Source of the DNA: Chrysemys picta bellii
Taxonomy: Eukaryota
NCBI RefSeq assembly: GCF_011386835.1
Contig: NC_088797.1
Coordinates: 74,214,001 to 74,278,000, forward strand
DNA: 64,000 nucleotides
Direction of reading: 5' to 3'
The position numbers and the translations under genes were made by a program. Positions within the stretch are counted from its first letter, which is position 1; each line of letters begins with the position of its first letter. This document shows, piece by piece, positions 2,459-63,309 of the stretch. Under the pieces are notes generated by a model, which did not search any database, was not told where the DNA came from, and worked only from the letters and a program-made list of their open reading frames with translations.

Positions 2459-3546
2459 AGAAGCAAATAACTTTCTAGTGGGTAGAGTCCCTGAGAATGT
2501 ATCAGATGAGAAGGAACCAAACCTTGTACTGCTTACCAATGCAAAACTCTCACCAGAGTCCAGGAAATCCAATATGCGAAATATAAAACAGAGGAGTGAC
2601 ATCTGGATTGTTCACAAATAACAAATTCCAATCAGAGACAATGGCTGTGCATCCAGAGAATCTAGTTCAACTTCTCCCATACAAACAGATTTGAGCTGGA
2701 GATTGATATCAATGCGAGGTGAGTTTTTTTCTGAGTAAAGACTGAAAGATTTGGCCCAAGAACAGGGTTTGATGCACTTCTAATCACAGCTGATGCATAT
2801 GGGACAGCAAACCACACTGCACACTACAGCAATATGATTCATGAGATTCTTTCAAGACTTACCTTTTGTGAATACAATAATAAAATATTTCACTTATAGC
2901 ATGTTTCATCCCAAAGATTCACAGAGCGTTTTATACAAATTGTAGACCAGATTCTCAGCCTTACTATGGCCATTTTCTGTTGCTCTTGGCATAAAGAGGC
3001 TGCAAAGCTGGGTTAACTAGTCTCTTGAAGATTACTCCTGTGTAGATGGCCCTGCACCATCCCATCCTGACCTCTGGTATATAGAACATATTAGGTCCAA
3101 CAAAAGGTGGCATGGCCCAAATGCCCTGTACTCCCACAATTTCCAACTAACATAACTGTCCTTTGGGCATTGTTGTGACTTATGCAGTTTAGAAAAGCCC
3201 TGAGGCTGCTCTAAGTTGCACCAGGAACTGAACTGGCCCCAGGTTTGAGAGGAGTCAACAAAAGTTATTTTCTCCCACCTATGCTCACCCAAAGCATAGC
3301 ATTGAGCCTGAAGTTTTCTTTTTCACAAAGACACAAAAAGGCTACCATAATTTGAAAAATAAATAAAATTGTATGAGCTTTCCCAAAGGGGAGGTTTCAC
3401 CACCAGCAGCAAAGGAAAACACACACAAAAATCACTCCCTCCTCTCTCCCAAAAAGTTATGCAAAAATAGTGAATTTTCCCATTTTTACCTAAAACAGCT
3501 GCGTACGCTAGCGATAGCCAATTCTTTAAAGAATTATGATGTAGCT

Positions 3547-3827
3547 CAGTGCTTCTCAAAGCTGGTCCGCCGCATGTTCAAGGAAAGCTCTGGCAGGCCG
3601 GGCCGGTTTGTTTCCCCCACTGACCGCAGTTCGCCGCTCCAGGCCAATAGGGGCTGCAGGAAGGGTGGCCCGCACCGCTTCCCGCAGCCTCCATTGGCCA
3701 GGAGCAGCGAACCGCGGCCAGTGGGAGCCGCGATTGGCCGAACCTGTGGACGCGGCAGGTAAATAAACCGGCCTGGACCACCAGGGGCTTTCCCTGAAGA
3801 AGTGGCGCCTGACTTTGGGAAGCACTG
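3547..3827. mobile_element. hAT (Charlie-like) MITE
   Basis: TIRs CAGTGCTTCTCAAAG / CTTTGGGAAGCACTG; flanking 8-mers ATGTAGCT / ATGTAGAC (6/8 TSD); GC-rich interior. Confidence 0.85.
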
Positions 3828-4027
3828 ATGTAGACTACAAATCTTACTAGGTGAAAATGTATATAATACAATCTTCAAGAGCATCACCAAATATGGTTTA
3901 GCTTGGCTTAAAGTGCTGCTGATTTTTTCAAACGAATGCACCATACCTTACCATGCCATATAGTTCTTTACCAAAATGTCTAGTTGAATATTTCTACTAC
4001 GTGTTTCACAGATGAAGGAAGAGATTG

Positions 4028-4178
4028 TGTGTGTAGCTCCTTAGTAGAATACAATGCCACTAATTATAAAGTACTCAGTGCCATATATGTAACAGCACAT
4101 AGTACCTGTGCTGTTACATATATGGCACTGAGTACTTTATAATTAGTGGCATTGTATTCTACTAAGGAGCTACACACA
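4028..4178. repeat. Near-perfect 151-bp palindrome (72-bp perfect arms, 7-nt spacer)
   Basis: 4028-4099 is the exact reverse complement of 4107-4178; spacer TAGTACC. Confidence 0.97.
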
Positions 4179-4667
4179 TGTGCACAAACTTCTGCTATTA
4201 ACCAAACTAGGCTGCATATGCACTGTATCAGAGGAGCAACTGAAATGTGCTTCTGAGGCAGCATTTGAGCGCTCAGCCCTACTAACTCCATCTCCACTTG
4301 AAGATATGGCTTTAATTCTATATATAATCAGAAAGTGCATAAATGTAGGAGTGCTTTAAATGCAATGCTCACCTTGTAGAAACCTCATTGCCTTTCAACT
4401 GCATAAAAGCTGAGAGCTCTGAATGGGGACCAAAGCCAAATTTCAAATGCTTCAAACACACTCTTCAACTCAGCCTTCACCTTCTCCTTCTCTTTTTCCC
4501 TCCTGTGTCACAATTGTTTCTTTAAATGTGTGATTTTTTTGGTATGAATTAGGGTTTTTTTGTAACATTGCCACATTTATCTTTCCTGCAAGAGATAATT
4601 TGTGTGACTCCTCCTGAATTTTTGTTCTGTTGAAAGATGCTTCTTTCCTTTGTCATCAATAATAGAG

Positions 4668-5089: not shown

Positions 5090-5480
5090 TAACTTCTGCA
5101 CTTCCCTCCCACCTGCACCCCCAACTCCAGCCCTGAGCTGCCAGCATGCCCTGCCACACTGCCCCCCTGCCCAGTACCCCTCACCCCCTTATGTCCAGCA
5201 ACCCCTATGCCCAGTGGCCCCTCTCCCAGAGATCTCCACCACAGATCCCTATGCCCAGCGATCTCCCACCCACAGACCCCACTATGCCCAGTGCCCCTCT
5301 CACAGCCCCCCCACCCAACTGCCCAGCACCCATATTCCTGAGGGAATTCAGCACCAAAAAATTAAATTCTGTGCGCAATATTTTAAAATTCTGCACATTT
5401 TGTCAATAAATAAATGTTGAGGCTCCAGCATAGCAGTGGCAAGCATAGGCCACTGGCTGCATGGAGGTGGAGATCACCCT
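5090..5480. repeat. C-rich loosely tandem (CCCTATGCCCAG) tract, probable non-autonomous DNA transposon remnant
   Basis: Several degenerate CCCTATGCCCAG units followed by GAGGGAATTCAGCACCAAAAAATTAAATTCTG; no TIR or TSD found. Confidence 0.4.
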
Positions 5481-8772: not shown

Positions 8773-9315
8773 CAGGGCTGGTGGAAGGATGTTTCGCGCC
8801 CTAGGTGAAACTTCCACCTTGCGCCCCCCGACCCCCCGCCCTGAGGCGCCCTCCCCACCCCCGCAGCAGCTCCCCCCCTCTGCCCTGAGGCGCCCCCCCT
8901 GCAGCAGCTCCCCACCCCCCACTCTGAGGCACCCTCCCGCCCCAGTTCACCCCTGACGCCCTCCTCCCCGAGCACGCCGTGGCTGCTTCACTTCTCCCGC
9001 CTCCCAGGGCACCAATCAGCTTAGGCGCCGCAAGCCTGGGAGGCGGGAGAAGTGAAGCAGCCACGGCGTGCTCGGGGAGGAGGCGGAGCAGGGGTGAGCT
9101 GGGGCGGGGAGTTCCCCTGCGTGCCTCCCCCCCCCCCCTTGCTGCAGGCAGCCCTCCCCGCGCTCCACTGCCCCAGCTCCCTCCGCCTTAATGCCGGCAG
9201 CGACCGGGGCGGCCGAAGATCCGGCCACCGCGGTCGTTGCCGAAGAAAATGGCGCCCCCAAATCCTAGCACCCTAGGTGACCGCCTAGGTCACCTAAATG
9301 GTTGCACCGTCCCCG
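8773..9315. mobile_element. GC-rich hAT MITE
   Basis: Perfect 8-bp TSD GGAATTAG (8765-8772 / 9316-9323); imperfect TIRs CAGGGCTGGTG / CACCGTCCCCG; internal CCCTGAGGCGCC repeats. Confidence 0.9.
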
Positions 9316-11645
9316 GGAATTAGGTGAGTATAAATTAAACAATCTGACCTCCAAGCCTCTTGGCTGGAGAGATGCCAGCTAGATTTTAGAAACTAAGGAA
9401 GTTCAAACCCTCCTCACCTGATACAAAGCCCGTTGAAGTCACTGAATAGACTCAACGGGCTTTGAATCCGGTTCTTAAAGTCTGACCCTGAATGTCAATG
9501 GGAGTTCCTCAGCCAGCATGTTTTCAGGATCAGGCCCTCAAGAATGGGGGATAAAACAAACTACATGTAGATTGAAGATGGGTTGTCCATAAATACTTGC
9601 AGAGTATCACTTATTAGTTTAGTTGTGATTTTCCGAAAGCCCTAAAGGAGCTGGTGCCCAACTTCCATTGATTTTTAAAATCCCAATATTGTGTGTGCTT
9701 GTGACCATGCCCTATAGTGATTGTTCCACAAACTGTCATGGATTTTCTACTATTACTAGTCGTGAGTAATTTCTCTTAGCTCAGGAAGTTAAAAGCCAGT
9801 GCCTTTAGAAACATGGACCCTGATCTTCAAAGAGGTGTTTGGGTGTTGGATGTGATTTATTTAGACATTGTGGCTGGCTGTGGTGGGGGGGAGAGGAGGG
9901 ATCTAATTTTTCTAGTCATGGTGGCTGTTATCTACAGCCGATGGATTCGTTATAAAGTGAAAGTTCTCACTTTACTCATTTCAGTCTTTGGCTAAACAAT
10001 TTTGCTTACTCCTGCCCATCACCCCAGTAAGGAGTTCAGTCTAGTCACTTCTAAACTCTTCAAAACAGCTTATCAATATTCCTGGGCATTACATAAAACT
10101 AGACTAAATGGAATCTGATCATTGGGTTTGCACATCACATCTTTCAGAACAGCAATTTTCCTTTTATGACTTCTAGTCTTTTCCTAGATAGGTATTTACA
10201 TACAAAGCAGTTTCTTTGCAGCTCACTGACCTCCTTTCAAATTAAAGGGAAAAAAATGTACCAGGATCACATTCTCTACTGGTAGTTAAACCAGCATCCC
10301 ATTTCCTACTGGTATCTGCTTGCAGCAATGGTTTCAAGCGGAAAGCAAGAAAGGTTGCTCTGCGGTATTAGGTATGGTCTCTAGGACACTGGTATGACTT
10401 ACTCTGGGAAAAGACGGTGGTATGACACCTTCCACACCTTCTTTGGGCCCAATTCTGAACAACCTTTCATTCAAGTAGTATTTTGGGAGTACAAGGAATG
10501 ATCAGGCCCTAAAGCACCTGGTCACTTCTGTCCAACCAATCAGGCCAGCTAATGTGTCTTTCAGTCTATATCACTGCAAAAAGTGTTTGCTTTTCTAGAG
10601 CACATCATTAAATATTCTGAAAGGAAGCCTTAGAAACATAGCTGTAAGAATTATTGCTGCAAGTTTGTAATTTCCAAGGTTCTCTTTAGATTTCAGCTGG
10701 GGAAATGAAACAGTGACAAACAACAACAAAAATAGTTGTCAGAACTCCACATACCTGCCATGATTTTTGTTATGCTTTATTTATTAAAATGCTCTGGATA
10801 CAGATTAATTTTCTTTCCTCAATATTTATTGTTTCATCTGCCTTGAAACCCAAATTGCAAGCTCTTTGATAAATGGATGGAAAAGGTGCCTGGTTTGGTT
10901 TCTCTGTAGCTTCTTAAATACTACTACCTTGCGTTGCTGAAATGCTATTTTGTAGCTTATGCCAATACTACCCAGAGAATCGTAGGATTTTACTATATCA
11001 TCTATGGCAGCAGGACTCTGGGGACCAATAGTCCTTCTTCCTCAGAAAGTGGGAGAATCAGATTAATGGTTAATTAGAAATCTGGCCCTTTCTAGTACCA
11101 GGAAATGCTACATCTCAGCAGAACGCCTCCCCAATCCCTACAGAGAAGTTTGCACAGGTAATTGAGGCTCCTCCACTACTACTCCAGCCTGATGACTGGG
11201 GCTGGCTCCATGTCCCTGGTGTTGCCCCTCTACAGAGGGGCAGACTGGAGATCTTTCCTCTATGCCCCCACATACATCCCTGTATAAAACACTGGGAGCC
11301 TCTGCGGGAAATAAACTCCATGCAGGGGTGTCTACTGCCCTGTGTGACTTCACTGAGCCTGCCCTTTCATTGTGAAACCAGGGTGCTATTGCAAGAGAGT
11401 CTTTCCCACCCGTGGAGGAGGAATGGGGTGGAGCAGAGTTTTTGCACTTTAAAAGAACCCATCCAAAGTCATTTGAAATCAGTAGGAATCTTTCCATTGA
11501 CACCTGTTGTCTTTGCATCAGGCCTAAAACACATCATTTTGTTCAGTGAAATTCTCATTTATCTCCCCTATTAGAGATTCATATAACTTATACTCTGTTA
11601 TTGTGTAGAGATAATAGAACCATGTGAACCTCAATTCTTCTAAAA

Positions 11646-11827
11646 CAACAAGGAGTTTGGTGGCACCTTAAAGACTAACAGATTTATTTGGGCATAAGCT
11701 TTCGTGGGTAAAAACCTCACTTCTTCAGATGCTTATGCCCAAATAAATCTGTTAATCTTTAAGGTGCCGCCAGACTCCTTGTTGTTTTTGTAGATACAGA
11801 CTAACACGGCTACCCCCTGATACTTGA
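11646..11827. mobile_element. Penelope-like element remnant (pseudo-LTR with inverted 54-bp arms)
   Basis: 11646-11699 is inverted at 11731-11784; typical tail TACAGACTAACACGGCTACCCCCTGATACTTG; 16-bp flanking duplication CTCAATTCTTCTAAAA (11630-11645 / 11828-11843). Confidence 0.85.
11692..11732 (-). ncRNA. Minimal type I hammerhead ribozyme motif (Penelope)
   Basis: Minus strand GCAU-CUGAAGA-A-GUGAG-GUUUUUA-CCCAC-GAAA-GCUUA-UGC: intact CUGANGA and GAAA boxes, stem I GCA/UGC, palindromic AAGCUU loop 3. Confidence 0.75.
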
Positions 11828-16900: not shown

Positions 16901-18711
16901 AAGATTAATAAGATTCAGCATCACCACTCTGCTGGTGCAAAGCAGCTGTAAACCTAGCTTAATTGGGTGGTTAAACCACTGCAGCAGCTCAAAGCAGCAG
17001 GAGTGTTCTAGTGAATCTAGCTCTTTATTTTTACAGTCTTTACCATATGCACAACCCAAAAGGCTTTATTCTTGAACATTCTGAACTGCTTTAACACTTC
17101 ACTGCAGCACAAAGACTCATACTGACAGGAAACAACACGAGGCTACAATTAACGAGTTGGGGACTATTTCCCCACACTCCCTGTGGTTCTAAAAGAGTCT
17201 GAAATTAAACAGGGCTCTAGTGACTTCTTGTTTCTGTATTGTATCATCATTTCTGAGAATGAGGTTTCTTGGGTGCTTCAGGCCCCAGGTAAATGGTAAC
17301 TATTTATTTTCTTGTTTAGCTGTTTACTTTTTTTATTAGATAGTCCCTTTAAATGCAAGTCCTATTGCTCTCAGTGAAGAGTAGTTTAATGGTCCAGTTT
17401 AGATCAGCCTTGTTCATCAATTGTGTGCTTCAATGGCTGGGTGAAGGAGATAAAAGTCACCCTGTCTTTCTGTACAAGGCCTATGGATTATCTGCTCTAA
17501 TTCACTGAGGACCATTGCTGGAAATTTTACAAAATAGCCTTTCAGTAAATGTGCTTTTAAAAGTTACAGTGTAACTAGACAACAAGCTTTCCATCCTTTT
17601 AATAAAGCACTAGCAGTTCCCACGTCTAGGCAGGTGAAATAATAAACAACCAAGAGAAAACAAGTTCTGTATATCCAGAGCATCTTAATAAATAAAAATA
17701 GTTTCTGTGGCTCAGTGCAGATCTTGTGGTTAGTCATGATAGTACATCTATTTTATTATTAAGTTAGACAATACTTTATAATGGCCATGGAAGAAAATAT
17801 GATACACAGTACATTGAATAAGTCATCTGCTGTGCTTTTACATATAGTATACAGTAAGAAACTATGAATAACAACATTTAATAATGTCCTGCAGTCCACC
17901 ATGCACTATCTATTGGAGAAACAATGCACAATAGAACATCGGCATCTCCTATGCACACCGCCTCTTCAAAAATGCTCCTTCCATTCCCCATGTGAATCAC
18001 CCACTATCCTCTGGAAGAACAACAGTTACTCTTCTTTCCAACTCCTTCCACTGCAGCATGGATCATTACCCCCACCAAACAAAAAAACACCCAAACAAAA
18101 AGATGCAGTCTAAAAGAGAAAACATAGTATTTCATGTTGTTAACAAGACGTTGAGTCTACTTGGTACAGGTATGGAACATTGTTTATGAGATCACACCTA
18201 CTAGTAGTTCTCTCCTTAATTGAGAGAGGTATAAGATCTGTTGTTGTTCAGTCTATATGAGACAACACTTTTAAGTGTTAAGTTCTTTTAGTTTTACTTA
18301 ATTTCCCTTCACTGATTCTACTGTTTTTCTCCATGGCCCAGGAAAAGAATTTCAAACCTCTCTTCCTAGTTGTTTCATCAACATTACAAGAACTGGATAG
18401 AGGCCCAAGCTGAAACCATGAATCTGAATCTTTCATGAGGTTTCAGAGTGCACGCTTGACGCAACAGCCACAACCCCAACCCCTCATATAGGAGGTTTGG
18501 CTCCAGAGGAAACCAAAAAACAAATCTCCTTAAAAATAAAAAAGCCTCAGTAGATACTGGGAAAAATACAACATTCCCCCTTAACACAAAGAAAAGCAGA
18601 AGGTTGATCAACCTTTGCATTTTAAATCATTTAATACTGTCCTAAAAAGTTCTATCCAGCTCCTACCCTGCTTTCCCCATTCATGTTGCAGGTAAACCTA
18701 ATACCCTATGG

Positions 18712-19409
18712 CAGGAGTGGGCAAACATTTTGGCCCAAGGGACAAATCTGGATGGGGAAATTGTATGCAGGGCCATGAATGTGGGGCAGGGGGTTGGGGT
18801 GCGGAAGGGAGTGCGGGCTGTGGGAGGGGGTGCGGTGTGCAGGAAGGGGCTCAGGGCAAGGAATTGGGGTGCAGGAAGGTGCTCAGGGCAGGGGGTTGGG
18901 GTGCAGGAGGGGGTGTGGCAGGGGGTTGGGGAGCTCAAGGCAGGGGGTTGAGATGCGGGCTCCGGCCCGGCACCACTTACCTCAAGTGGCTCCAGGGTGG
19001 CAGCAGCGCACAACGAGGCTAAGGCAGGCTCCCTGCCTGCCCTGGACCCGTGCTGCTCTGCTCCCGGAAGTGGCCAGCATGTCCGGCAGTGGCTCCTGGG
19101 GGTGGGGTGGGGTGGGGTGGCGTGAGGCGGGCGGCTCTGCCGCGCGCTGCCCTCACCTGCAGGTACCACCCCCAAAGCTCCCATTGGCTGCGATTCCCCA
19201 TTTCCAGCCAACAGGAGCTGTGGGAGGCAGTGCCTGCAGGCGAGGGCAGCACACAGAGCCCTCTGCCACCTCTTCCCCCAGGGGCCGCAGGGACATGGTG
19301 CTGGCCGTTTTTGGGAGCGGTGCAGGGGCAGGGCTGGCAATCCCATGGGCCGGATTGAAAGCCCTAACGGGCTGGATCCGGCCTGTGGGCCATAGTTTGC
19401 CCTCCCCTG
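18712..19409. mobile_element. GC-rich hAT (Charlie-like) non-autonomous element
   Basis: TIRs CAGGAGTGGGCAAAC / GTTTGCCCTCCCCTG; flanks CCCTATGG / CTCTATCA (5/8); internal GGGTGCAGGA repeats. Confidence 0.85.
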
Positions 19410-20160
19410 CTCTATCAGGATCTCAGACAGTAGAGAGTTTTCATATTTTACACAAAATCCTTAAAAGCACTCATTTGGTTCAGTGCTGTCAAACATTATC
19501 AGCAGAGCTTCCCTATCTAATTAAGTGGTCGGTTAATCACTCTAGAGGCAGCAGTTTTTCATTTTAAAGGACCATCTCAGGAAAAGGCTAAGTGCTCCTT
19601 TAAGGCTGTGAGATGCCTTACCTTCGTGTTGTGCAGGCCCTTGTTACAGAAAACTCTGTCAGAGTGAAATTCCTAAACCTTCTGATTAAGATCAAGCATT
19701 TTATGATAAGTTTGGTAGAGTCTAATCTCTTCAAGGAAGGAATTCCTCTGGAGGAGGAATTCATCATTGAACTGAATTTTTAAAATGGCAACTTGGGGAG
19801 AGGCACAGGGAAAGGAGTTGTATATCACATCTGGAATGGAATTGGCTGAAGGTTTTGATATGAAACACAAATCTAGGTGCGAGTTTGTGGAAAGAAGTGT
19901 CTGGATCCTTCCCTTGCATATTTTATTAATTTGATGAAATCTGGAAGCATTGTAATTGCAAAATCCTTTCCATTAATGCCAAGTGTGAGAAGACACATTT
20001 GTTCCAGGGGGTTCTGTGGAGTTTGGGGCAGTCTGGTATGGAGTGCCGGCCTGTGGTTACTTCCTATTTCCCCATGCGACGGTGGGCAATGGGTAATGGA
20101 TCTACATAACAATGTGTCTTTTAGCTCTTTTTCATGTGCATGCTAGTTCTGCTGTGTATA

Positions 20161-20627: not shown

Positions 20628-20757
20628 NNNNNNNNNNNNNNNNNNNNNNNNNNNNNNNNNNNNNNNNNNNNNNNNNNNNNNNNNNNNNNNNNNNNNNNNN
20701 NNNNNNNNNNNNNNNNNNNNNNNNNNNNNNNNNNNNNNNNNNNNNNNNNNNNNNNNN
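20628..20757. other. Assembly gap (130 N)
   Basis: Run of N. Confidence 1.
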
Positions 20758-23216: not shown

Positions 23217-23804
23217 CTTGCTTGAGACCTCGATTAATTGTGTGAGTCAGTAAGTCTGTCTGAATCTGTGGACAGTTCCAAAAAATATGAGAGTCTGTCT
23301 GTACAATTCCGGTCTGTTTGGGCTTATTATTTTTTGATGATTATTGTAAGTGGTATTCTTGCCAACAGAGGGTGTATGCATTTGGAGTTATTTTCTATGG
23401 AGTCCTGAAATTCTGCTTTCCATTTTTCTGTCATTATGCTATGCCACCAGCTGGGTGAATAATTAATAACAAATCCTTTATTAGAAGAATTTTGCCCATT
23501 TATCTGTTCACAAATTGTCTATAAACAGATTGCTTTTTCCTGAAAATTATTTATGAATCAAATTATTTGCCAAATAATTTCTTCATTTAATTCTTCGTCT
23601 GTGTGACGGGGCAGCTCCGCCCCGCACTAGCCCCGGAAGTGACAGACAGATACATCTGACAGGCGCCCAATCCACGCTTCCGAGGCTTCCCAACCCCGAG
23701 TCCAGACACAAGACACCCCAGACAACGACCCGGAGGGAGCAACGGCCCTGAGAGCGAGCGGGCCCCCTTGGGGAAGGCCCGGGGCCTACTGAGACCCGAG
23801 AGAG

Positions 23805-24590
23805 GTGTTCGGGTGTGGACAAGAAGGGCATTTTCGACAGGATTGCCCTTTCATGGACTGCAGCTATGGGCAAGCCTGGGTGGCCGGACGAAGGGCGCGG
23901 AGGAGAGGGATAGGAAAGCTGGTGGTCCCCGTCCGGGTCGAGGGGATCCCCACAAACGCCCTCGTGGACTCAGGGTACAGTCAAACCCTCATACAGGAGG
24001 GGCTGGTCCCAGACCTTAATCTCTTGGGTCCCCCGATCCGCCTGTCGGACCTGACGAAAAACTCTCAGCCTCGACAGGTTCAGTGGTCCGAACAATGCGA
24101 GAAGGCCTTTGAAACACTAAAGGAACGGCTCACCCTGGAACCCATCCTACGACACCCAGACTTTCAGAAGGAATTCATACTGCAAACTGACGCATCAGAA
24201 GCAGGCTTGGGGGCAGTCCTATCCCAAGAAGTAGATGGGGAGGAACACCAAGTGCTATACCTGAGTCGTAAACTGTTCCCTCGGGAACAACATTATTCGA
24301 CAATAGAAAAAGAGACTCTGGCAGTACGTTGGGCCATCGATGCCCTGCGGTATTACCAGCTGGGGAATAACTTTAAGTTGATCACGAATCACGCCCCCCT
24401 ACGGTGGATACACAGTATGAAGGACTTGAACCCCAGGATTGTGCGGTGGTACCTCTCCCTCCAACCCTACGACTTCCGGGTGTTTCATCATCCTGGTAAG
24501 GCCCACGGTAATGCGGATTTCTTCTCCAGGCAAGGGGAGAGGGAGGAGGGGGCGGACCTACCCGGGGGATCCTTCTTAAAGGGGGAGGTG
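23805..24590 (+). pseudogene. Gypsy gag-pol remnant: CCHC knuckle, protease N-half fused in frame to RT connection and RNase H
   Basis: CGQEGHFRQDCP (first Cys appears lost to a 1-nt deletion), ALVDSG protease motif, WSEQCEKAFETLK, FILQTDASEAGLGAVLSQ, YSTIEKETLA, HHPGKAHGNADFFSR. Confidence 0.92.
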
Positions 24591-25515
24591 TGTGACGGGG
24601 CAGCTCCACCTCTCACTAGCCCCGGAAGTGACAGACAGGTAGCTTTGTCAGCGGAAGTCCCACCCCACCCATACTGGGCATGCTCCAAATGCTCCGTGAG
24701 TATAAAAGGAGGGAACTCAGCTCAGTCTGGGCTGGTGGCCGAAGGAGAAGGACCTAACCGGGCAGCTCCTGCAGAGGACCAGCCGGCACGAACCCCTACC
24801 GGGGGAGGAACCAGAGGAGGTGACAGCCCCGGAGACCCGCGGAGGACCCTGGGATTTGTGGATGACCCCGACTCCCAAACCGGTAGGAACCGACCCGGGG
24901 GGTGGGGGTGTGATAGACTGGCACCTTGCCCCTGGTAAGCCTCAGCTTGTTTCGGTAGGACTACCCCCACTGAGCCAGCAGTAAGGTCCTGCTGCCCTGT
25001 AACCAAGGGCTTGTTCTATGGACTCTGGCCACTAGGCCGTGTTGCCCTGTAGCCAAGGGCTAATAACCTGGACTATGGCCACTAGGCCGTGCTGCCCTAC
25101 AACCAGGGGCGGTTATATGGACTTTGGCCACTAGGCCGTGCTACCCCGCAACAAGGGTTTATCCTATGGACTTTGGCCACTAGACTGTGCTGCCCTGCAA
25201 CCAGGGGCGGTTATATGGACTTTGGCCACTAGGCCGTGCTACCCCGCAACAAGGGTTTATCCTATGGACTTTGGCCACTAGACTGTGCTGCCCTACAACC
25301 AGGGGCGGTTATATGGACTTTGGCCACTAGGCCGTGCTACCCCGCAACAAGGGTTTATCCTATGGACTTTGGCCACTAGACTGTGCTGCCCTGCAACCAG
25401 GGGCGGTTATATGGACTTTGGCCCCTAGGCCATGCTGCCCTGCAACCAGGGGCGGTTATGTGGACTCTGGCCATTAGGCCGTGCTGCTCTGTAACAAGGG
25501 GCGTAAACCCTCACA
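24591..25515 (+). repeat. 3' LTR (925 bp) with TATA-like box TATAAAAG at 24701
   Basis: Begins TGTGACGGGG right after the PPT and ends TCACA before the TSD. Confidence 0.88.
24990..25510 (+). repeat. 49-bp minisatellite, about 10.5 units, alternating A/B variants
   Basis: Units start GGACT at 25020, 25070, 25119, 25168, 25217, 25266, 25315, 25364, 25413, 25462. Confidence 0.95.
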
Positions 25516-30900: not shown

Positions 30901-31991
30901 ATGTGTTGTTAATCACAAACATGGAATTTATTCATGATATAACAAAATGGCAAATGAAATGGAATACAACTGCAATGGATTTGGTGAATAACAATATGAT
31001 TTAAATTAAATCCTTTGGAATTTCCGTCAGCCTGTCAGATTGCTTAATAAGGCTGTTTGGAAGATATAACATTCCGACGTGCAGTCCAGACCACTGAGGG
31101 ACTGAGTCATCCTTGCCCTGAAACCTTGGGTGCCTCCCAATGCTTTGCTGCTGTAGTTCCCACCTGGATTCCTCACAAACAGCATGCAGGTCACACCTTG
31201 AATGTCTGTGTATAACCACAGCCCTGGTCCAGCAACTCTCACCCCAGCATCCTCTCAGCAACCACCACCCACACTTCGGCTTCCAGCAGCCTTGGTTACT
31301 GTTTCAGGGAGACCCCAACATACTCCTAGTCCTGAATTTTCCCCAAAAAACATATGTTCTAAACTGTCCAGCCCTCTTCTGGACAGTTCACATATTTTAG
31401 GTCCGTTTCCCTTCTAAGGGGATTAATATACAACAGTTTTCTACTTCAAATGGTGTTACCCATACAATTGAGTTTCAACACAACACTGAGTTAGTTTTGA
31501 TTAAACAATCAATTTTATTTAACTACAAAGAGATTTTAAGTGAGTACATGCATAAGGCATTAAAATCAGAAATGATTACAAGAGAAATAAAGATAAAATG
31601 CTTCCTAACACTAAAACTTAATAAACTAGACTTAGGCCTTGGCTACACTTGCAGATGTACAGCGCTGTGAGTTAAACCTGATTTCGTGCAGCTGAATAGG
31701 GAAAGCGCTGCAGTCTGTCCACACTGACAGCTGCCCAGCGCACTGTCGTGGCCACATTTGTGGCAATTGCAGCACTATTGGGAGCGGTGCATTATGGGCA
31801 GCTATCCCACAGAGCACCTCTTCCCATTCTGGCACCATGGGTTGTGGAAGGGGGCGTAGGTGCAGGGCATTCTGGGTCCTGTCCCAACGCCCCATGATGC
31901 ATCGCTTCGCATCCCAGAAATCCCTTTGTTTCCGTCCACCTTTGGCGCCATCTTTCAACGGTTTCTGTGCAGCGCGATCTGTCTGTGGGAA

Positions 31992-33239
31992 ATGGAGCCC
32001 GAACTGCTGAGGCGTATGCTGACTTATCTCGCCAGCACGTCACGTTTGGCTGTCGAACTGTTCCTTAAGATCCAAAGTGACAGTGAGCGTGAGGAGTCCG
32101 ACGATGCTATCGAGCCACGTAACGCGTACGACACGAAATTGCTTGTGGCATTCATTGACATGCTCAGCACCGTGGAACGCCGCTTTTGGGCTCAGGAAAC
32201 AAGCACCGAGTGGTGGGATCACATCGTCATGGAAGTCTGGGATGATGAGCAGAGGCTGCAGAACTTTCGGATGAGAAAAGCCACTTTCATGGGACTGTGT
32301 GAGGAGCTTTCCCCCACCCTGTGGCGCAAGGACACGAGATTGAGAGCTGCCCTGCCAGTGGAGAAGCGGGTGGCTATTGCAATCTAGAAGCTGGCAACTC
32401 CAGACAGCTACCGGTCGGTCGCAAACCAGTTTGGAGTGGGAAAGTCGACCGTTGGAATCGTGTTGATGCAAGTTTGAAAGGCCATTAATCGCATCCTACT
32501 CAGAAGAACCGTGACTCTGGGTAACATGCAGGAAATAGTGAATGGCTTTGCACAAATGGGGTTCCCTAACTGTGGAGGGGCGATAAATGGGCCGCATATT
32601 CCTATTCTGGCACCACCCCACCTAGGATCCGAGTACGTTAATCGGAAGGGGTATTTCTCTATGGTTCTCCAGGCGCTTGTGGATCACCGTGGGCGTTTCA
32701 TTGACATTAACACAGGCTGGCCCGGAAAGGTGCATGACGCACGCATCTTTCAGAACACTTGGCTGTTCAGGAAGATGCAGGCCGGGACTTTTTTCCCAGA
32801 GCGGAAGATCATGGTAGGGGAAGTTGAAATGGCCATTGTGATCCTTGGAGATCCCGCTTACCCATTAATGCCGTGGCTCATGAAACCCTACACAGGGAGC
32901 CTTGACAGCAGCAAGGAATGGTTCAACTACAGGCTGAGCCAGTGCCGAATGACTGTGGAGTGTGCCTTTGGCCGTTTAAAGGCCCGCTGGCGATCTCTGT
33001 AGGGGAAGCTGGACTTGGCCGAAAACAGCATCCCCACGGTTATATCCGTGTGCTGTGCCCTCCATAATATTTGTGAAGGGAAGGTTGAAAGATTCACTCA
33101 GGCATCGACCTCTGAGGATCAACACCTGGAGGCTGAATTTGCACAGCCAGAGAGCAGGGCTATTACAGGGGTCCAGCGCGAGGCTACAAGGATTGGGGAT
33201 GCCTTGAGGGAGCAATTTGAGGCTGAAAACCAGCAGTGA
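31992..33239 (+). pseudogene. Harbinger DDE transposase (415 codons, three in-frame stops, no frameshift)
   Basis: NFRMRKATF, NQFGVGKST, GAINGPHIP (catalytic D to N), NRKGYFS, GKVHDARIF, GDPAYPL, RMTVECAFGRLKARWR, CCALHNIC; stops at 32385, 32475 and 33000. Confidence 0.95.
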
Positions 33240-33458
33240 TATCTGGTGCCCTGCACGGGAGTGAAGTGCAGTAGTTCCAATCTTTAGGAATCAGTGTTTG
33301 CTAAGCAGACTTGCAGTGCCTGTTTATTTCCTGGGCTAAGGAGTCTTTTACTTTATGCAATAATAAAGAATGTTTTCAAAGCCAAAAAATCCATTTATTG
33401 AAAAGAAAAAAAAATATTTATTGAAAAGAAAAAGGGGGTGGAGTGGGGAACAGTACAA

Positions 33459-35212
33459 TCACAGATTCGCGTATGTCCTGTCTGGTGTGCAGTGCAGTGA
33501 GTGCTGCACTTCAGGACAGCTATACTGCATGGTGATGGGGGTTGAGTGCAGAGGGTAAGGGTCATGGTTTTCACGGCTGGGTGGTGAAGATACAGGTGTT
33601 GGAGGCAGCGGGTGGCGTGAAGAACACGGAAGTTGGGAAAGTGGGTTGGAGGTGACAGTGGGGCACAACGGAAAGAGTTTTGGGACAAGGGCTGTGGGGG
33701 GGGTGGCGTTTGCGGTACTGCTCCTCTTTCTGCATGGCTACCAGCTCCTGGATAGCGTCTGCTTGGTGCTCCAGGATGCTTATGAGCCTATCAGTGCTTT
33801 GCTGCCGGTGCGCGGTGCTTTGCCACCAGTGGGCTGCATTTTCCTGGCAGATCCTGCTTTCTCTCTCCCTCCAGTTCTGTGCTTTCTCATTCTCTTTAAT
33901 AGATTGCCACATCACTTCTTGCAGCATGTCTTCTTTGCTTTTTCGCGGTGTCTTCCTGAGTCTTTGCAGTCTCTGTGCAGGCGATAAGAGGGACAGCTGA
34001 GGTCTCAAGGTTGATGCAGCTGTATAGGCAAAATGCAACATTTAACAGAGGCAGCATTGTTTATACCAGACAAAGTAATGATTCCCCCCGCACTTAAGGA
34101 GTAGAAAACACACAGAGTCTACACAATAGCATAATTTTCCCGTCTGAAACAGAGCACACATATCCCACGGGAGCCTCAAAATGGTGAGTAAGGGGGACTG
34201 ATTGTTTCAGGGCTGCACTGTCCTCTGGGTTTCTGTGCCTTGGGGAGAGCCAACAGCTTCAGGGGGCACCTACACTGAACACCGTCCCAACATTTTCCAC
34301 AAGAGTTCGTCGTGGACGATATCTCGCTGCTGAGGTAGACCTGGGAAGCAAGGGAGGGTCTTCTACTGCAATGCGGCTTCCGCCCTGGCCCATATGCAGC
34401 TTGCCTGTGTGCAGCAATGGTCCCCCCGCCCCTCGCGGCACAGTGGCGCGAACACGTTAGCCTGGCTGGGACAAGGACCACGGTGGCTCTCCCGATAAAC
34501 CTCCGCAAGCGCATTGCACACGTTCTGGATGAGACATTCAAGGAGATTACCGAGGCCGATTACCGCGATGTGATAAACCACATCAATGCACTATTCCACA
34601 TCTAGGCATGCATGCCTAACCCTCCTCTCCCAAAGAGCCCACACCGAAAAAATTCCTTCCCCCCCCAAAAAAAAAAAACCCACTTACCGGGAACCTGCTC
34701 TTCTGTTTTACCTCCACCAAGTACCGGCCGCTGCGACTGGCTACCTTCCACCTGTCTAGAGAAGAGCTCCTGGCTCCCTGGCTCCAGGGATTCTGGGGTG
34801 TCTCCATCCGACCCACCACCATCACTCCCGTTTTCCTCCTCTTCCTCCTCCCCCACTCCCACACTGGCTCTGAAGTGTCCATGGTGGTGCTCGGAGTGGA
34901 GGTGGGGTTAACCCCAAGTATTGCATCCAGCTCTTTGTATAATCGGCAGGTCGTGGGGGGAGCACCCGAGCAGCCGTTTGCGTCGCGGGCTTTGCGGTAG
35001 GCACTCAGCAGCTCCTTCACTTTAATCCTGCACTGCAGGGCGTCCCGGTCATGGCCCCTTTCCATCATGTCCTTTGATACCTTCCTGAAGGTATCGTAAT
35101 TCCTACTGCTGGAGCACAGCTGGGACTGTACAGCTTCCTCCCCCCAAACACTGATGAGGTCCAGCAACTCGCCATTGCTCCATGCTGGGGCTCGCTTGGC
35201 GCGTGGAGGCAT
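33459..35212 (-). pseudogene. Harbinger Myb/SANT-like (trihelix) DNA-binding protein, two exons
   Basis: MPPRAKRAPAWSNGELLDLISVWGEE...RDALQCRIKVKEL...YKELDAILG; acidic tract; GT-AG intron 34020-34687 joins in phase 1 (EQVP-AASTLRPQ); coiled-coil-like and Pro-rich exon 2; frameshifts near 34860 and 33700. Confidence 0.9.
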
Positions 35213-36136
35213 GGTCACTTGGAAAGATTCGCTGATAGCACTCCACACCAGGCCGGGCTGAGCAAACAGGAAGGGGATTTTTAAAATTCCCGGGGAATGT
35301 AAAGGGTGGGTCACATGGTTGGTTACCTGAGGCCAAGGCAGTAGAGTTTGAACTGATGACCAGAGTGGCTAGAACAGGCATTGTGGTATACTGCCGAATA
35401 ATTCTGGAGGCCATTCACAGCGCATTGGGCGGCCACCCTGGTGCTGCAGCGGCAGCGCAATACTCACTATTCCTCTTGGAGAGGTGGAGTACATGCAGCG
35501 CTGCAACCATGGAGATACAGCGCTGCAAATGCCTTGCCAGTGTGGACGGGGAGTGAGTTACAGTGCTGGGGGCAGTTTTACAGCACTGTAACTCGCAAGT
35601 GTAGCCAAGGCCTTAGTTCAAGGTGAAATCCTTTACCACATGTTCTCGGTAACTTTGCTGACCAAATTCTCAGCCCAGGATCTGCTCTGAAAGGTCAAAG
35701 GGTGTTTCTTTTTGATTTCTTGTGTGAAAGAGAGAGAGCGAGATGGATAGGGAGAGATACCTTGGGGTGTTTTTATCCATTACTTCATAGTCCAGTCACC
35801 CTTTGAAATGCATTTTCCCGAGGGTTACCCCTCAGTAAAATCCATTCCCTCTGTGAGGTTGGAGTGATGGAGTTTGGTAGCGAAAGAGGTTTCATGCTGT
35901 TGTGTGCTAAGATGCAGATCTGATTGTTCCTGCCACCCTACCTTGCCAAAGAATGGCCACTTCAGTGATGGCCCATCAACTTTGATGACACCTGGCTAAA
36001 GGCATCAGCTTGTCCTTTGTCTTAGAGAAACTGGTCTACCCTGACTTGTTTTTTAAACGTATTTCAGACCTAGTTTCATCTTATGTTTATAACTTTACAT
36101 ATAATGTTACTACACACATTTCATTATAGTATTAGG

Positions 36137-57765: not shown

Positions 57766-59776
57766 ATGGACACTGCTCAGCTGTGCGCTATTGTGGTGAG
57801 CATTGCAAACACCATGCCTTTATCCTGCAGTATTTCCAGAGTCGCAAGAGGAACTGCCGCATGGAACATGGCTATGTCCTTCAAGTAGCCCTCCTGGAAG
57901 CCATGGAACAGAACAATTCCCAGTTGCTGTTGGCAATCATGCAGCAGCTGAACACAGTGGAGCGCCAGTTCTGGGCCTGAGAAAAACACTGACAGGTGGG
58001 ATCGCATCGTTATGCAGCTATGGGACAACAAGCAGTGGCTGCAGAACTTTCAATGCACAAGGCCATTTTCCAGGAACTGTGTGAGGAGCTCTCCCTCACA
58101 CTGCAGTGCAGTGACGCTAAAATGAGACCTGCTCTTACAGTGGAGAAGTGAGTGGCCATCGCTCCGTGGCAGCTTGCAATGCCAGACTGCTACTGGTCAG
58201 TGGGGAATAAATTTGGAGTTTGTAAATCCACTCTGGGGAGTTGCTATGATTAAAAGTATTCAGGGTCTTCTGCTAATCACCTTCTGCTAAGAAGGGTAGT
58301 GACTCTGGGTAATGTGCAGGACATACTGGATGGTTTTGCTGCAATGGGGTTCCTTAATTGTGGTGGAGTGATAGATGGCATGCATATCCTTAACTTGGCA
58401 CCAGACCACCTTGCCAAAGAGTACATAAACAGAAAGGGATACTTTCCTATGATGTTGCAAGTGCTGGTGGATCACTGGGGGCGTTTTACCAACATCAACA
58501 TGGGATGCTCCGGGAAGGTGCATGACATTCACATCTTTAAGAACACAGGTCTGTTCAGAAAGTTGCATGCATGGATTTTCCTTCCAGACTGCAAAATCAC
58601 TTTTGGTGATGCTGAAATGCCAATAGTAATCCTGGGAGACCCAGCCTACCCCTGAGTCCCATGGTTCATGAATAGGGCCCTACCTAATTCACAGCCATAA
58701 AAAAATGCATCATGGACCATGAAATCTGTTCTTTTGTATGCTTTTACCCTATACTGTACAAATTTCCTGGTGGAGGCCAGCATTGCTCAAACTAGGTTCT
58801 TAGTCACAGGGGAGTTGCCAGGTTATTGTAGGGGGGTCATGGTATTGCCACCCTTACTTCTGTGCTACCTTCAGAACTGGGCGGCTGAAGAGCGGCGATG
58901 TTGGCTGGGTGCCCAGCTCTGAAGGCAGTGCCCCACCAGCAGCAGTCCAGAAATAAGGGTGGCAATACCATACTATGCCACCCTTACTTCTGCACAGCTG
59001 CCTTCAGAGCTGGGTGGATGGAGAGAGGCAGCTGCTGAGTGAGGGCCCAGTTCTTCAAGCAGCAGCGCAGAAGTAAGGGTATCAATACCATACCATGCCA
59101 TCCTTACTTCTGTGCTGCTGCTCATGATGGCGCTGCCTTCTGAACTGGGCTCCTGGCCAGCAGCCACTGTTCTTTGGTTGCCCAGTTTGGAGGGCTGCGC
59201 TGCCACCAGAAGCAGAGCAGAAGTAAGGGTGGCAATACCACAAGCCCCCTACAATAATCTTGCAAGCCTCCCATTACCTCCTTTTGTCCAGGACCCTTAC
59301 AGTTACAACCCCATGAAATTTCAGATTTAAATATCTGAAACCATGAAATTTATTATTTTTAAAATCTATGACCATGAAACTGACCAAAATGGACCGTGAA
59401 TTTGATAGGGCCCTATTCATGAAGCTGTACACTGGGCACCTGGATAGCAGCAAGGAGTGGTTCAACAATAGGCTCAGTAAGTTCAGAATGGTGGTTAAAT
59501 GTGCCTTTGGCCATTTGAAGGGTCGCTGGCGCAGTTTGCTCACTAGGTTAGACCTCGGTGAAAAAAATATTCCCATGGTTGTAGCTGCCTGCTGTGTGCT
59601 TCATAATATCTGTGAAGCAAAGGGAGAGAAGTTTCCATACGGGTGGGGAATGGAGGTGGATAGACTGTCTGCTAATTTTGATTAACCAGATTACCAGGGC
59701 TACAAGAAGAGCTGAGCACGGAGCAATGCATCTCAGGGAGGCTTTGAAAACCCATTTTGATAATGACCCACAGTAA
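57766..59776 (+). pseudogene. Harbinger DDE transposase, frameshifted and split by a hAT MITE
   Basis: VERQFWA, GGVIDGMHI, NRKGYF, GKVHD, GDPAYP, then after the insertion MKLYTGHLDSSKEWFNNRLSKFRMVVKCAFG (catalytic E to K) and CCVLHNIC. Confidence 0.9.
58673..59415. mobile_element. hAT non-autonomous element (743 bp) with internal hairpin modules
   Basis: Perfect TSD TTCATGAA (58665-58672 / 59416-59423); TIRs TAGGGCCCTACCTAA / TTTGATAGGGCCCTA. Confidence 0.92.
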
Positions 59777-59867
59777 TGTGCACTTCTTTCCTGTATTGTG
59801 CCTACCCATAGTCTGAACATTGCTGTGACTGCTGTGTGTTTCTCATGCACCTCCCCGCAGTACCTCA

Positions 59868-60158
59868 GGCCTGGTCTACACTGTGGGGGATCGACCTAAG
59901 ATATGCAACTTCAGCTATGAGAATAGTGTAGCTGAAGTCGACATATCTTAGGTCGATTTACCTCGCATCCTCACGGCACAGGGTCGACTGCTGCCACTCC
60001 CCCATTGACTCCGCTTCCGCCTCTCGCTGCAGTGGAGTACAGGAGTTGATGGCAGAGTGATTGGGGATCGATTTATTGCCTCTACACTAGACGCGATAAA
60101 TCAATCCCTGATAGATCGATCACTACCCACTGATTCAGTGGGTAGTGTACACGTACCC
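59868..60158. mobile_element. Harbinger-type MITE nested between the transposase and Myb-like genes
   Basis: Ends GGCCTGGTCTACACT / AGTGTACACGTACCC; TSD TCA (59865-59867 / 60159-60161). Confidence 0.85.
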
Positions 60159-60329
60159 TCAGTTTCCCTGTCCCTCCCCTCCCCACACTTTGAATTAATA
60201 AAGATGATTTCATTTTCAAGACCCCCTCGCCTACTGGAACGTGTGTGAGGGGGAAGGGTAGGATGGCGATGTTGGAATGCTGTTCAGCAGGGGCTGCAGA
60301 GGGAGTTGATCCTGCTTAAAATGTTGAGG

Positions 60330-60705
60330 AGTCTCATACTCTGTGTTGCCTGCAGTGGCCCAGGGCTCCGACTCCTCAGAGGTATCCATGCTGCTCTTGG
60401 GGGTCATGGTGGGGTTGCCACTGAGAATAACATGCAGCTCCTTGTAAAAGCAGCATATCTGCGGTACTGATCCAGAGCGACAGTCTGCCTCCCTTGCCTT
60501 CTGGTATCGCAGTTCCTTGATTTTCACACAGCACTGCTGTGTGTCCCTAGTGTAGCCGTTCTCCCCCATGCCCTGCATGATCTGCTTGTATATATCTATG
60601 TTTCTATGGCTGGCTCGGAGCTGTGCCTGCCCAGCGTCTTCTCCCCACAGACCCAGCAGATCCACCACCTCCTGTGTACTCCAGACAGGAATGTGGAGCA
60701 GGCAT
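60330..60705 (-). pseudogene. Harbinger Myb/SANT-like gene, exon 1 only
   Basis: VDLLGLWGE...YTRDTQQCCVKIKELR...FYKELHVILSG; no second exon visible. Confidence 0.85.
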
Positions 60706-63309
60706 GATCAGTTGGGCAGGTGAGCTCTCCATGCTGAACAAACAGGAAGTGGCAATTCAAAAGTTCCCTGTCCTTTAACAGGGGAGGGGCTGTTTCCTAT
60801 GTACTTGGCTCCTGGGCAGCAGAGTTGAGAACAGTGACCAGAGCAGTCACAGCAGAGCATTGTGGGACACCTCCTGGAAGCCAGTTAAGTTGATGTAAGC
60901 AGCATAGTGTCTACACTGCCACTACTTTGACATATCTACATCAAATTAAGTGCTATGCCTCTCGCAGAGGTGGAGTAATTAAGTCAACATAGCAGGTGAA
61001 TTACATCGGTGGAAAGGACCTGGTAGCATAGACACAGACATTAAGTCAACGTAAGGCAGCTTATGTCAACCAACTATGTAGTGTAGATCAGGCCTTAGTC
61101 TGAGAATGGCTTTTATTTTTCATATTATTAAAACTTTTACTACTGGCAGCTGTCTTTAAAACTGCAATAAATTTCCACTTTATCTACTTCTAGTTTTCTT
61201 GGCAGATTAGGTCATGTGGACAGATGAATTAAGAAGAAAAGGGAATAATAAAGTATATAGGGCTAGACTGAAACCAAGCTAAGGATCTAGCCAATAGCAT
61301 TCAAGTCACCAACAGTCCATAGTAAAATATTTAATCAGAAATAAAGAGCCAATGTGGTTGCTCCAGGTGCTTTTTAACAACTTGAAAATCAAAAAGGGGC
61401 TAAAATAAAAGATTGAAAGAAAAAAGAGCAAAATATACGACAGGAGTGAGATATAGGAGAATAGTGTGGAGTGAAACTAGACAGGCAATGTGTGGAATAC
61501 AGGAAGGAGTAATAGTACTTCCAAATATCCACCCTTTTCTTTCTTTACATCCCCACCCACATTCATTCCCACAGGGTCTTTCTAGCACTGCTGCTAGTAC
61601 TAGACCCTCAGATCCTGGCATGCTGGATGCACTGGGACCCAGATTGTGGCTAGCCTCTGCTCAAGGGTTTGAAGGTAGGAAGGGATGAAATGTTCCTTCA
61701 GCTGTCTCCCCCCAACCCACACATCTGGGAGGAAATAGGGACAATCTAGCTCCAAAATGTGATTGGGTTTAAAGTTATTATATACTATTATTATAAATGA
61801 GCCAGACCTTCAACTAGTGTTAATTGGAGTAGCCCCACTGACTTCAATGCAGCTATGCTGATTTACTTCTGCCGCAGAGAGACTGGCCAGCATGCTTTAT
61901 TAGTATTAAAATCTCTAAGTTCATTTCATTTTGTAACTCATCCAAACAATGATGTGGATTGCTTCCCTCATCCCCTTTCCTGCAGGCTGGTAAATGTACT
62001 ATACATAAAACAGCCACTTTATTCATCTGAGGAGAAATTGCTCCTCATACTTAAAATGAGATTGGAATGTGTCTGTGCTTGTTCTAAGATACTGTCACCT
62101 GGCCTATGGCCTATATTGTATGTAGTTGAAACCTATTTTATGGGACTCAGAGATGTTCAGAAGTGATGAGAGCTGAGGCAGTTACTAACATGGTGACAAT
62201 GTGGGTCCTTTGTCCCTTGAACAGGGGAGGTTTCAGATGAGAGACAGCCCTGTGTTTTCATTTCTAGCTTTTGGCAGCATGATTTCCAATGGACTTTATT
62301 TCCTTTCTGATAGTTGATTCCATGCTTTGAACAATGTCAGTGTCACAATGTAAATAATGACCCCTACTAAAATCACAGTCTAGAAGGAAATTCTTGGTGT
62401 GATAGCTGTATGTTTTGCATAATAGATTTCCTTTGTTTCAGGTATGTTGTGTTAAATGGCAGCCCATCAACATGCTCCCATGCTTTACATTTTATGCATG
62501 CAGAATGCATGACTTATTCCTCAGAATTGTATTTAACATGGAAAAATAGTGAGAATTAATCTTTGGCAGCTGTGCAGTTTAAGCACTTTACTGGTGCAGT
62601 TTTATTCCAATTAGACTTTTTGTATAAAACTTCATTTAAATTTAGAAATGGATTTCTACCCTGCCCTGCTCATTCTTCTACAAATAACTGTTGACTCATG
62701 AATTCATGAATTATTTCATAACCCCTAAGTCATATAAACGATAACAAAAAATTTTATATTGGCAGCCAGCTCATGTTTCTCTCTGATGAGAAACCTCCTC
62801 CTCCATTATTTTCTGTACTTAAGAGCTTCCCTTCACTAAAATACAATAGAATGGACTGCCAAGGTCTGAGGACTGCCTTCAGGCCAGTCTACAGTTTCAT
62901 GCACATGCAGAATAAAATATGGCATTAAAGGTTTGCAGGTGTTCAGAATACCGGATACAACGACAAAACACGGATCTGCAGTTCAGCAGAAAATTGGAGA
63001 CTGCTCAAGCTGCAAAATGTAGATCTGAATTTCCACTATCCCAAAGTTCAGGCATGTTTTGTGCCAAAATTCTGGTTTGGCCCATTAAAAAGAATTGTTT
63101 GCAAAATGTGGTTACCGATCCATGTTTAGATTTTAAACAGCCCTAACATTCAGAGAGGTTGAATCTGGAGTTTGGGTTGGGCCATTTCTATATAAAATAA
63201 TATTTTAAAATAATGAAACTAAAAATAAATAAATAAATTGGACTCTGGACTTCACTTTCTTTTGAGGTCAGTTCTAAAGTCCATTGAAGGTAATGGAAAG
63301 ACTCTCTTG

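What the first reader, a model, noticed from the sequence alone, without database searches (positions are those of the whole stretch)
4028..4178. Unexplained palindrome with perfect 72-bp arms in unique AT-rich DNA
Seen: 72 bp match their reverse complement exactly across a 7-nt spacer (TAGTACC) that is itself one or two changes from full symmetry around GTAC. GC is about 36%. There is no TSD and no hAT- or Harbinger-type terminus, whereas the long inverted repeats inside the elements here are imperfect. Inference: either a very recent template-switch fold-back duplication or arms homogenised by conversion. It could extrude a cruciform, or give a 72-bp dsRNA stem (endo-siRNA or miRNA-like substrate) if transcribed. 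An assembly or chimeric-read artefact is also possible.
Basis: partly seen in the sequence, partly recalled or inferred. Interest (0 to 1): 0.72.

Follow-up and report, generated by a model that had tools for sequence, protein, structure and literature searches.

The report
Perfect 72-bp fold-back palindrome
A 151-base stretch of turtle non-coding DNA reads the same on both strands, most likely because the copying machinery once turned back on itself for 72 bases; this is a known kind of mutation, it has no evident function, and I could not check it against raw reads.

Summary
Arms 4028-4099 and 4107-4178 are 72 nt and 100% complementary across the spacer TAGTACC. GC is 36%, there is no real TSD, and there is no second copy in the window.

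New here: only the right arm is bounded by a 5-nt direct repeat, TGTGC (4107-4111 and 4179-4183). Removing that arm leaves a plain sequence with a small hairpin seed, GCACA-N7-TGTGC. The spacer has no in-register symmetry. This fits one switch-and-return copying error (template-switch mutation, or snap-back repair) in which the left arm is ancestral and the right arm is the copy.

"Very recent" is not required. With the slow turtle clock, zero differences in 144 sites allows up to about 20-70 My.

No Rfam family reaches threshold and no host exon was found nearby, so I see no evidence of function.

The scan has noted other perfect palindromes in this genome. One is an 801-bp fold-back that a follow-up agent read the same way, also without reads.

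Verdict: a probable long example of a known mutation type, of low to moderate interest.

The parts
4028..4099 (.). Left arm, 72 nt; inferred to be the ancestral source copy
   Evidence: Exact reverse complement of 4107-4178. It has only 1 nt of direct repeat at its edges, so it does not look like an insertion.
4100..4106 (.). Spacer TAGTACC, asymmetric; inferred to be ancestral sequence that became the loop
   Evidence: 0 of 3 in-register pairs are complementary; the internal GTAC is out of register (read).
4107..4178 (.). Right arm, 72 nt; inferred to be the derived, reverse-complement copy
   Evidence: It starts with TGTGC and is followed at once by TGTGC, the signature of an insertion.
4095..4099 (.). 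GCACA, left half of the inferred 5-bp seed hairpin
   Evidence: Complementary to TGTGC. With the right arm removed, the remaining sequence folds as a 5-bp stem with a 7-nt loop, DNA dG -3.7 kcal/mol.
4107..4111 (.). TGTGC, first copy of the 5-nt direct repeat bounding the right arm
   Evidence: Edge-repeat measurement: right arm 5 nt, left arm 1 nt.
4179..4183 (.). TGTGC, second copy of the direct repeat, first bases of the right flank; inferred to be the microhomology used in one of the two template switches
   Evidence: An edge repeat of 5 nt or more occurs at 0.4-0.8% of all 72-nt segments in this window.

Best explanation
The palindrome is the scar of a single switch-and-return copying error in the turtle germline, and it has no function of its own. 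The inferred ancestral sequence ran: left flank, left arm, TAGTACC, TGTGC, right flank. It therefore held a chance mini inverted repeat, GCACA-N7-TGTGC. During replication, or during repair synthesis at a break, a growing strand left its template and copied 72 nt (67 nt if primed on TGTGC) of the neighbouring sequence in reverse-complement orientation. The template was either the strand itself after snapping back or the opposite strand. It then returned to the original template. One of the two switches was guided by the 5-nt homology TGTGC/GCACA; the other shows none. The net result is a 72-nt insertion, the right arm, bounded by TGTGC on both sides. The arms are perfect because they were made in one step and the turtle clock is slow, not because something keeps them alike. 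Shown: the perfect arms, the sharp borders, the asymmetric spacer, the direct repeat around one arm only, and the absence of a TSD. Inferred: the ancestral state, which arm is the copy, and a germline origin.
For: The arms are exact with sharp outer borders. TGTGC lies at 4107-4111 and 4179-4183, whereas the left arm has only 1 nt of edge repeat. Such an edge repeat is found at 0.4-0.8% of 72-nt segments in the window, so about 1-2% for two arms. With the right arm removed, the sequence keeps a 5-bp stem and 7-nt loop. The spacer shows no in-register symmetry, as expected if it is plain ancestral sequence. The four-point template-switch model describes exactly this product (PMC5453318). Template-switch events of 28 to 83 bases that create perfect hairpins in one step have been inferred in mammals (PMC10710096). 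There is no TSD beyond 2 nt and no other copy in the window.
Against: No outgroup or second assembly was available, so the ancestral state is inferred from a single sequence. No reads were seen, so an artefact is not excluded. The direct repeat is only 5 nt and lies in GT/CA-rich sequence, so its significance is modest (p about 0.01-0.02). Only one of the two switch junctions shows microhomology. At 72 nt the copied tract is near the top of reported template-switch lengths. It is well above the 5-15 nt snap-back insertions analysed for polymerase theta (PMC7454005).
Confidence: 0.6

Rival explanations
1. It is a sequencing or assembly artefact: a fold-back chimeric molecule made in vitro, or a local misassembly, became the consensus, and the real genome has one arm only.
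For: No read evidence could be obtained. Library preparation is known to produce chimeric reads with inverted-repeat or palindromic sequence at natural inverted repeats (PMC10908179), and long reads show fold-back artefacts (PMC12870357). In-vitro snap-back would use the same GCACA/TGTGC seed. First-stage notes list many perfect palindromes in this genome, which could point to a technical cause.
Against: The structure needs two switches and a clean return into continuous sequence; there is no N within about 16 kb (the only N run is 20628-20757). Chimeric artefact reads occur at low allele fraction, and I would expect them to continue in the inverted direction rather than return. The published painted-turtle assembly averages 18-fold coverage (PMC4054807), so a rare chimera should not win the consensus. 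I did not verify which assembly this window comes from.
Confidence: 0.14
2. It is a copy of a dispersed fold-back or MITE-like transposon family whose whole body is a hairpin.
For: The window is rich in transposons (Harbinger DDE and Myb domains, an LTR-element RNase H domain; a Penelope-type hairpin at 11636-11794). Finding no second copy in 64 kb is weak evidence, because the clear MITE-like element at about 3529-3845 also has no second copy here.
Against: There is no TSD beyond a 2-nt TG. The direct repeat bounds one arm, not the whole unit. A transposon insertion does not predict that removing one arm leaves a seed hairpin.
Confidence: 0.08
3. It is an older imperfect inverted repeat whose arms were later made identical, by quasi-palindrome correction or by gene conversion between the arms.
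For: Classical template switching turns near-perfect inverted repeats into perfect ones (PMC5453318). Zero differences in 72 bp is what such correction would give.
Against: Identity falls from 100% to background exactly at the arm ends, with no degraded extension. The direct repeat around one arm points to a de novo insertion. At turtle rates no homogenisation is needed to explain zero differences.
Confidence: 0.1
4. It is a functional hairpin-RNA gene (a source of miRNA-like or endo-siRNA small RNAs) kept perfect by selection.
For: The RNA fold is extremely stable. Template-switch hairpins are a documented source of new miRNA genes (PMC10710096).
Against: No Rfam family reaches its gathering score. 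The sub-threshold miRNA matches score alike on both strands and are far below threshold, so they are generic hairpin matches. A 72-bp perfect stem is about twice the 35-bp stem preferred for pri-miRNA. No transcription evidence and no host exon were found nearby.
Confidence: 0.04

Closest known systems
Short-range template-switch mutations (four-point model; Loytynoja and Goldman 2017, PMC5453318) and template-switch-born hairpins (Monttinen et al. 2023, PMC10710096)
   Same: One event writes the reverse complement of neighbouring sequence and gives a perfect inverted repeat with a short loop. It is followed by a return to the original template.
   Different: The 72-nt tract is at the long end of reported events (28-83 bases). 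Here the ancestral state is inferred from a microhomology signature, not from an outgroup. No RNA product is known.
Snap-back templated insertions of synthesis-dependent MMEJ / polymerase-theta end joining (PMC2943611, PMC5728401, PMC7454005)
   Same: A 3' end primes on a short inverted repeat in its own strand, is extended, and the product is joined with microhomology. This gives an inverted copy of flanking DNA.
   Different: The insertions analysed there are 5-15 bp, against 67-72 nt here. No deletion is evident at the junction.
Large fold-back inverted duplications, including origin-dependent inverted-repeat amplification (PMC10766183)
   Same: They start at short inverted repeats with a small spacer. 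The spacer survives as the asymmetric centre.
   Different: Those events copy kilobases to megabases and change copy number of chromosome segments. Here the polymerase returned after 72 nt.
MITEs and fold-back transposons
   Same: A short non-coding unit made almost wholly of two inverted arms.
   Different: No TSD, no second copy seen, and the flanking direct repeat surrounds one arm only.
Palindromic AT-rich repeats (PATRRs) and other cruciform-prone fragile palindromes (from my own knowledge)
   Same: A near-spacerless palindrome with low GC that can extrude a hairpin or cruciform.
   Different: It is much shorter (151 bp against several hundred) and only moderately AT-rich (64% AT). No instability is known.

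Membership tests
Template-switch mutation (four-point model) | A segment that is the exact reverse complement of sequence close by | tested here: met
   72 of 72 nt, 7 nt apart
Template-switch mutation (four-point model) | The whole difference from the ancestor is explained by one switch and one return | tested here: inconclusive
   The derived sequence parses as a pure 72-nt insertion bounded by TGTGC, but the ancestor is inferred, not observed
Template-switch mutation (four-point model) | An outgroup or parental sequence lacks the copy | not testable with these tools
Template-switch mutation (four-point model) | The variant is real in sequencing reads | not testable with these tools
MITE / fold-back transposon | Target-site duplication flanking the whole element | tested here: not met
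   Only a 2-nt TG match, with a 1 in 16 chance
MITE / fold-back transposon | Multiple dispersed copies | tested here: inconclusive
   None in the 64-kb window, but a true MITE-like element nearby also has none here; the genome-wide test was not possible
microRNA precursor (Rfam families) | Match to a family model at its gathering score | tested here: not met
   0 matches at gathering. The best sub-threshold matches score 51.6 against 89 and 49.5 against 90 bits, and are equal on both strands
microRNA precursor (Rfam families) | Stem of about 35 bp with an apical loop of 10 nt or more | tested here: not met
   The stem is 72-73 bp and the loop 7 nt
microRNA precursor / hairpin-RNA locus | Transcription and small-RNA reads | not testable with these tools
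Palindrome maintained by arm-to-arm gene conversion | Arms more alike than the age of the structure allows | tested here: inconclusive
   The age is unknown. Zero differences fits up to 21-69 My without conversion

The most novel reading that the evidence does not exclude
This locus may be one of many. First-stage notes on this genome list perfect palindromes with arms of roughly 50-110 bp or more in unrelated sequence (a CR1 element, Penelope elements, and an 801-bp fold-back around a hAT MITE). If these are real, the painted-turtle germline would either run unusually long template-switch tracts or, through its slow clock, preserve them as a readable archive. In that case some of them, this one included, could be newborn hairpin-RNA loci.
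Probability: 0.12. Interest if true: 0.6.

Novelty: new member of a known kind. Interest (0 to 1): 0.3.

Why it matters
If real, this is a clean and unusually long natural example of a template-switch mutation. The polarity (which arm is the copy) and the seed hairpin can be read from the derived sequence alone, and that prediction can be tested directly in related turtles. Such events create perfect hairpins in one step and are a proposed source of new miRNA genes. Long perfect palindromes are also potential fragile sites. On its own, though, it is a neutral scar in non-coding DNA, and specialists would not find it surprising.

Tried and rejected
- **Other contigs.** I tried look-up of encoding contigs with two window ORFs lying beside that stretch (5146-5406 + and 3373-3759 +), hoping for other contigs of the locus.
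- **Searches made after the decline.** The decline did not name human-likeness. Afterwards I ran an Rfam scan of 3900-4300 and a findings look-up by sequence (blank, which means nothing here). I sent nothing from the stretch to any public sequence collection.
- **Host gene.** Six-frame stop-free segments over the window showed no convincing exon. That route to orthologous loci was dropped and the costly protein searches were not used.
- **Known RNA.** Rejected.
- **Coding reading.** The ORFs over the arms (3984-4142 +, 4064-4297 -) encode the same peptide only because of the symmetry.
- **Hairpin-opening (P-nucleotide-like) origin, or central deletion of a once fully symmetric palindrome.** Rejected, because the spacer keeps no in-register symmetry.
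- **Transposon terminus with TSD.** Rejected.
- **NUMT or viral hairpin terminus.** No tRNA or rRNA match and no viral-type ORF nearby.

Full report
**Observation.** Positions 4028-4099 and 4107-4178 are 72 nt each and perfectly complementary, separated by TAGTACC at 4100-4106. A pattern search with up to three mismatches finds only the two arms in 64 kb, and 100 shuffles gave none. A sensitive local BLAST of 3846-4500 against the window finds only the self-inverted hit. A scan for perfect inverted repeats with spacers up to 60 nt makes this the longest in the window. Next come a 49-nt pair at 8960-9083 and a 24-nt core in the Penelope-type hairpin at 11676-11754; Markov simulations gave none of 14 nt or more. 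GC is 36.4% with no CpG. As RNA the stretch folds into one uninterrupted stem at -134.9 kcal/mol, z = -20; with DNA parameters it folds at -84.4 kcal/mol.

- The spacer is not close to symmetric in register. Its three pairs (T/C, A/C, G/A) are all non-complementary, and the internal GTAC is centred half a base off the palindrome's centre.
- One other inverted repeat in the window is also perfect.

**Anatomy that bears on origin.** Complementarity falls from 100% to background exactly at both outer ends. Around the whole 151-bp unit the flanks share only TG, so there is no target-site duplication. The two arms differ in one respect. The right arm begins with TGTGC (4107-4111) and is followed at once by TGTGC (4179-4183). 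The left arm has only a 1-nt edge repeat. Over all 72-nt segments of this window, an edge repeat of 5 nt or more occurs at 0.4% (one direction) to 0.8% (summed). That makes the chance roughly 1-2% for two arms: modest but real, and somewhat weakened by the GT/CA-rich context. If the right arm is removed, the remaining sequence reads left arm, TAGTACC, TGTGC, right flank. The last five bases of the left arm (GCACA) and TGTGC then form a 5-bp stem with a 7-nt loop, DNA dG -3.7 kcal/mol.

**Mechanism (inferred).** These features fit a single switch-and-return copying error. A nascent strand left its template and copied the neighbouring 67-72 nt in reverse-complement orientation. It did so either on itself after snapping back on GCACA/TGTGC, or on the opposite strand, and then resumed on the original template. 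Read left to right, the first switch is primed by the 5-nt homology and the return re-copies TGTGC. Read right to left, the strand leaves and returns at the same point, and the return is guided by the 5-nt homology. In both readings the other junction has no microhomology. The reverse polarity, with the left arm as the copy, has no microhomology at either junction. I therefore take the left arm and the spacer as ancestral.

The four-point template-switch model describes exactly this class of product (PMC5453318). Single events of 28 to 83 bases that create perfect hairpins have been inferred in mammals (PMC10710096), so 72 nt is long but within the reported range. A break-repair version, snap-back synthesis in microhomology-mediated end joining, gives the same product. 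The polymerase-theta snap-back insertions analysed in PMC7454005 are 5-15 bp, so I rank replication-type switching first. The asymmetric spacer argues against a once fully symmetric palindrome that lost its centre, and against a hairpin-opening origin.

**Age.** The transposon content (Harbinger, an LTR element, a Penelope-type hairpin) is at least what such a genome would hold. The painted-turtle genome paper states that turtles evolve at about one third of the human rate (PMC4054807). Taking a human long-term rate of about 1e-9 per site per year (my own knowledge), I used 0.3-1e-9. Zero differences in 144 sites then has 50% probability out to 5-16 My and 5% probability out to 21-69 My. Neither extreme youth nor homogenisation by conversion is required. 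The same paper puts the Trachemys-Chrysemys split at about 10-15 My, so close relatives may or may not share the palindrome.

**Function.** Nothing points to one.
- No Rfam family reaches its gathering score in the window.
- A permissive scan of 3900-4300 gives miRNA-family matches far below threshold that score the same on both strands, as any long perfect hairpin would.
- The stem is about twice the 35-bp length preferred for pri-miRNAs.
- Stop-free segments in all six frames show no convincing host exon in the window.
- The recognisable coding remnants are transposon genes: RT RNase H at 23.8-24.9 kb, and DDE_Tnp_4 plus Myb domains at 31.6-35.6 kb and 58.2-60.7 kb.

My committed reading is a neutral mutational scar. 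It could extrude a cruciform or, if transcribed, give a 72-bp dsRNA, but I could not test either.

**What could not be tested.**
- None of the DNA collections on hand holds turtle genomes.

As a result three checks remain open: read support (artefact or not), the orthologous state in other turtles, and the genome-wide copy number. The decline did not mention human-likeness. After it I ran only an Rfam scan and a findings look-up on the stretch, and sent nothing from it to public sequence collections.

**Rivals.**
- Artefact, about 0.14. Fold-back chimeras do arise in vitro at natural inverted repeats (PMC10908179; PMC12870357). However, they occur at low allele fraction, and I would expect them to carry a single junction and not to return cleanly into continuous sequence. 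The nearest N run here is 16 kb away.
- Dispersed hairpin transposon, about 0.08. It has no TSD, and the direct repeat surrounds one arm only. Absence of copies within the window is weak evidence, since a clear MITE-like element nearby is also single here.
- Perfected older quasi-palindrome, about 0.10. It is not needed and does not predict the edge repeat, but it is not excluded.
- Selected hairpin-RNA gene, about 0.04.

**Context from the scan.** First-stage notes on this genome list many other perfect palindromes. A follow-up agent read an 801-bp fold-back as a large case of the same copying slip, also without read evidence. These notes are unchecked. They raise both a biological possibility (long template switches that are frequent or well preserved in turtles) and a technical one (a class of assembly artefact). 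The edge-repeat test used here could be applied to all of them.

**Verdict.** The most likely explanation is a long template-switch (fold-back) inverted duplication with the left arm as source, at confidence about 0.6. It is a new member of a known kind, of low to moderate interest.

Noticed in passing
window 8936-9108 (perfect core 8960-9008 / 9035-9083): A second perfect inverted repeat with 49-nt arms and a 26-nt spacer. It lies inside an 84%-complementary larger palindrome in a very GC-rich repeat-like stretch, with short tandem units at 8854-8938. Neither arm has an edge direct repeat, so it looks like a hairpin built into a repeat element rather than a fresh template switch.
   Followed up: partly
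window 3529-3845: A MITE-like element just left of the palindrome. It has imperfect 33-nt (76%) and 27-nt (78%) inverted arms around a GC-rich core, and no second copy in the window.
   Followed up: partly
window 11636-11794: A Penelope-type hairpin with 64-nt arms, 92% complementary, and a 31-nt spacer.
   Followed up: partly
window 31635-35612 and 58254-60707: Two Harbinger-type elements. DDE_Tnp_4 domains lie at 32511-32999 and 58254-58652, and Myb/SANT-like domains at 34616-35311 (-) and 60234-60707 (-). The second copy looks more degraded, with shorter domain matches.
   Followed up: partly
window 23793-24935: A 381-aa open frame with reverse-transcriptase RNase H domains (RT_RNaseH, RT_RNaseH_2), a fragment of an LTR retroelement pol gene.
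   Followed up: partly
window 18646-19567: A GC-rich block (48% GC over 18001-20000) with open frames of 221-262 aa on both strands and glycine/arginine-rich, repetitive translations. It is probably a low-complexity repeat rather than a gene.
   Followed up: no
window 20628-20757: The only assembly gap in the window, a 130-N run. I did not touch it.
   Followed up: no
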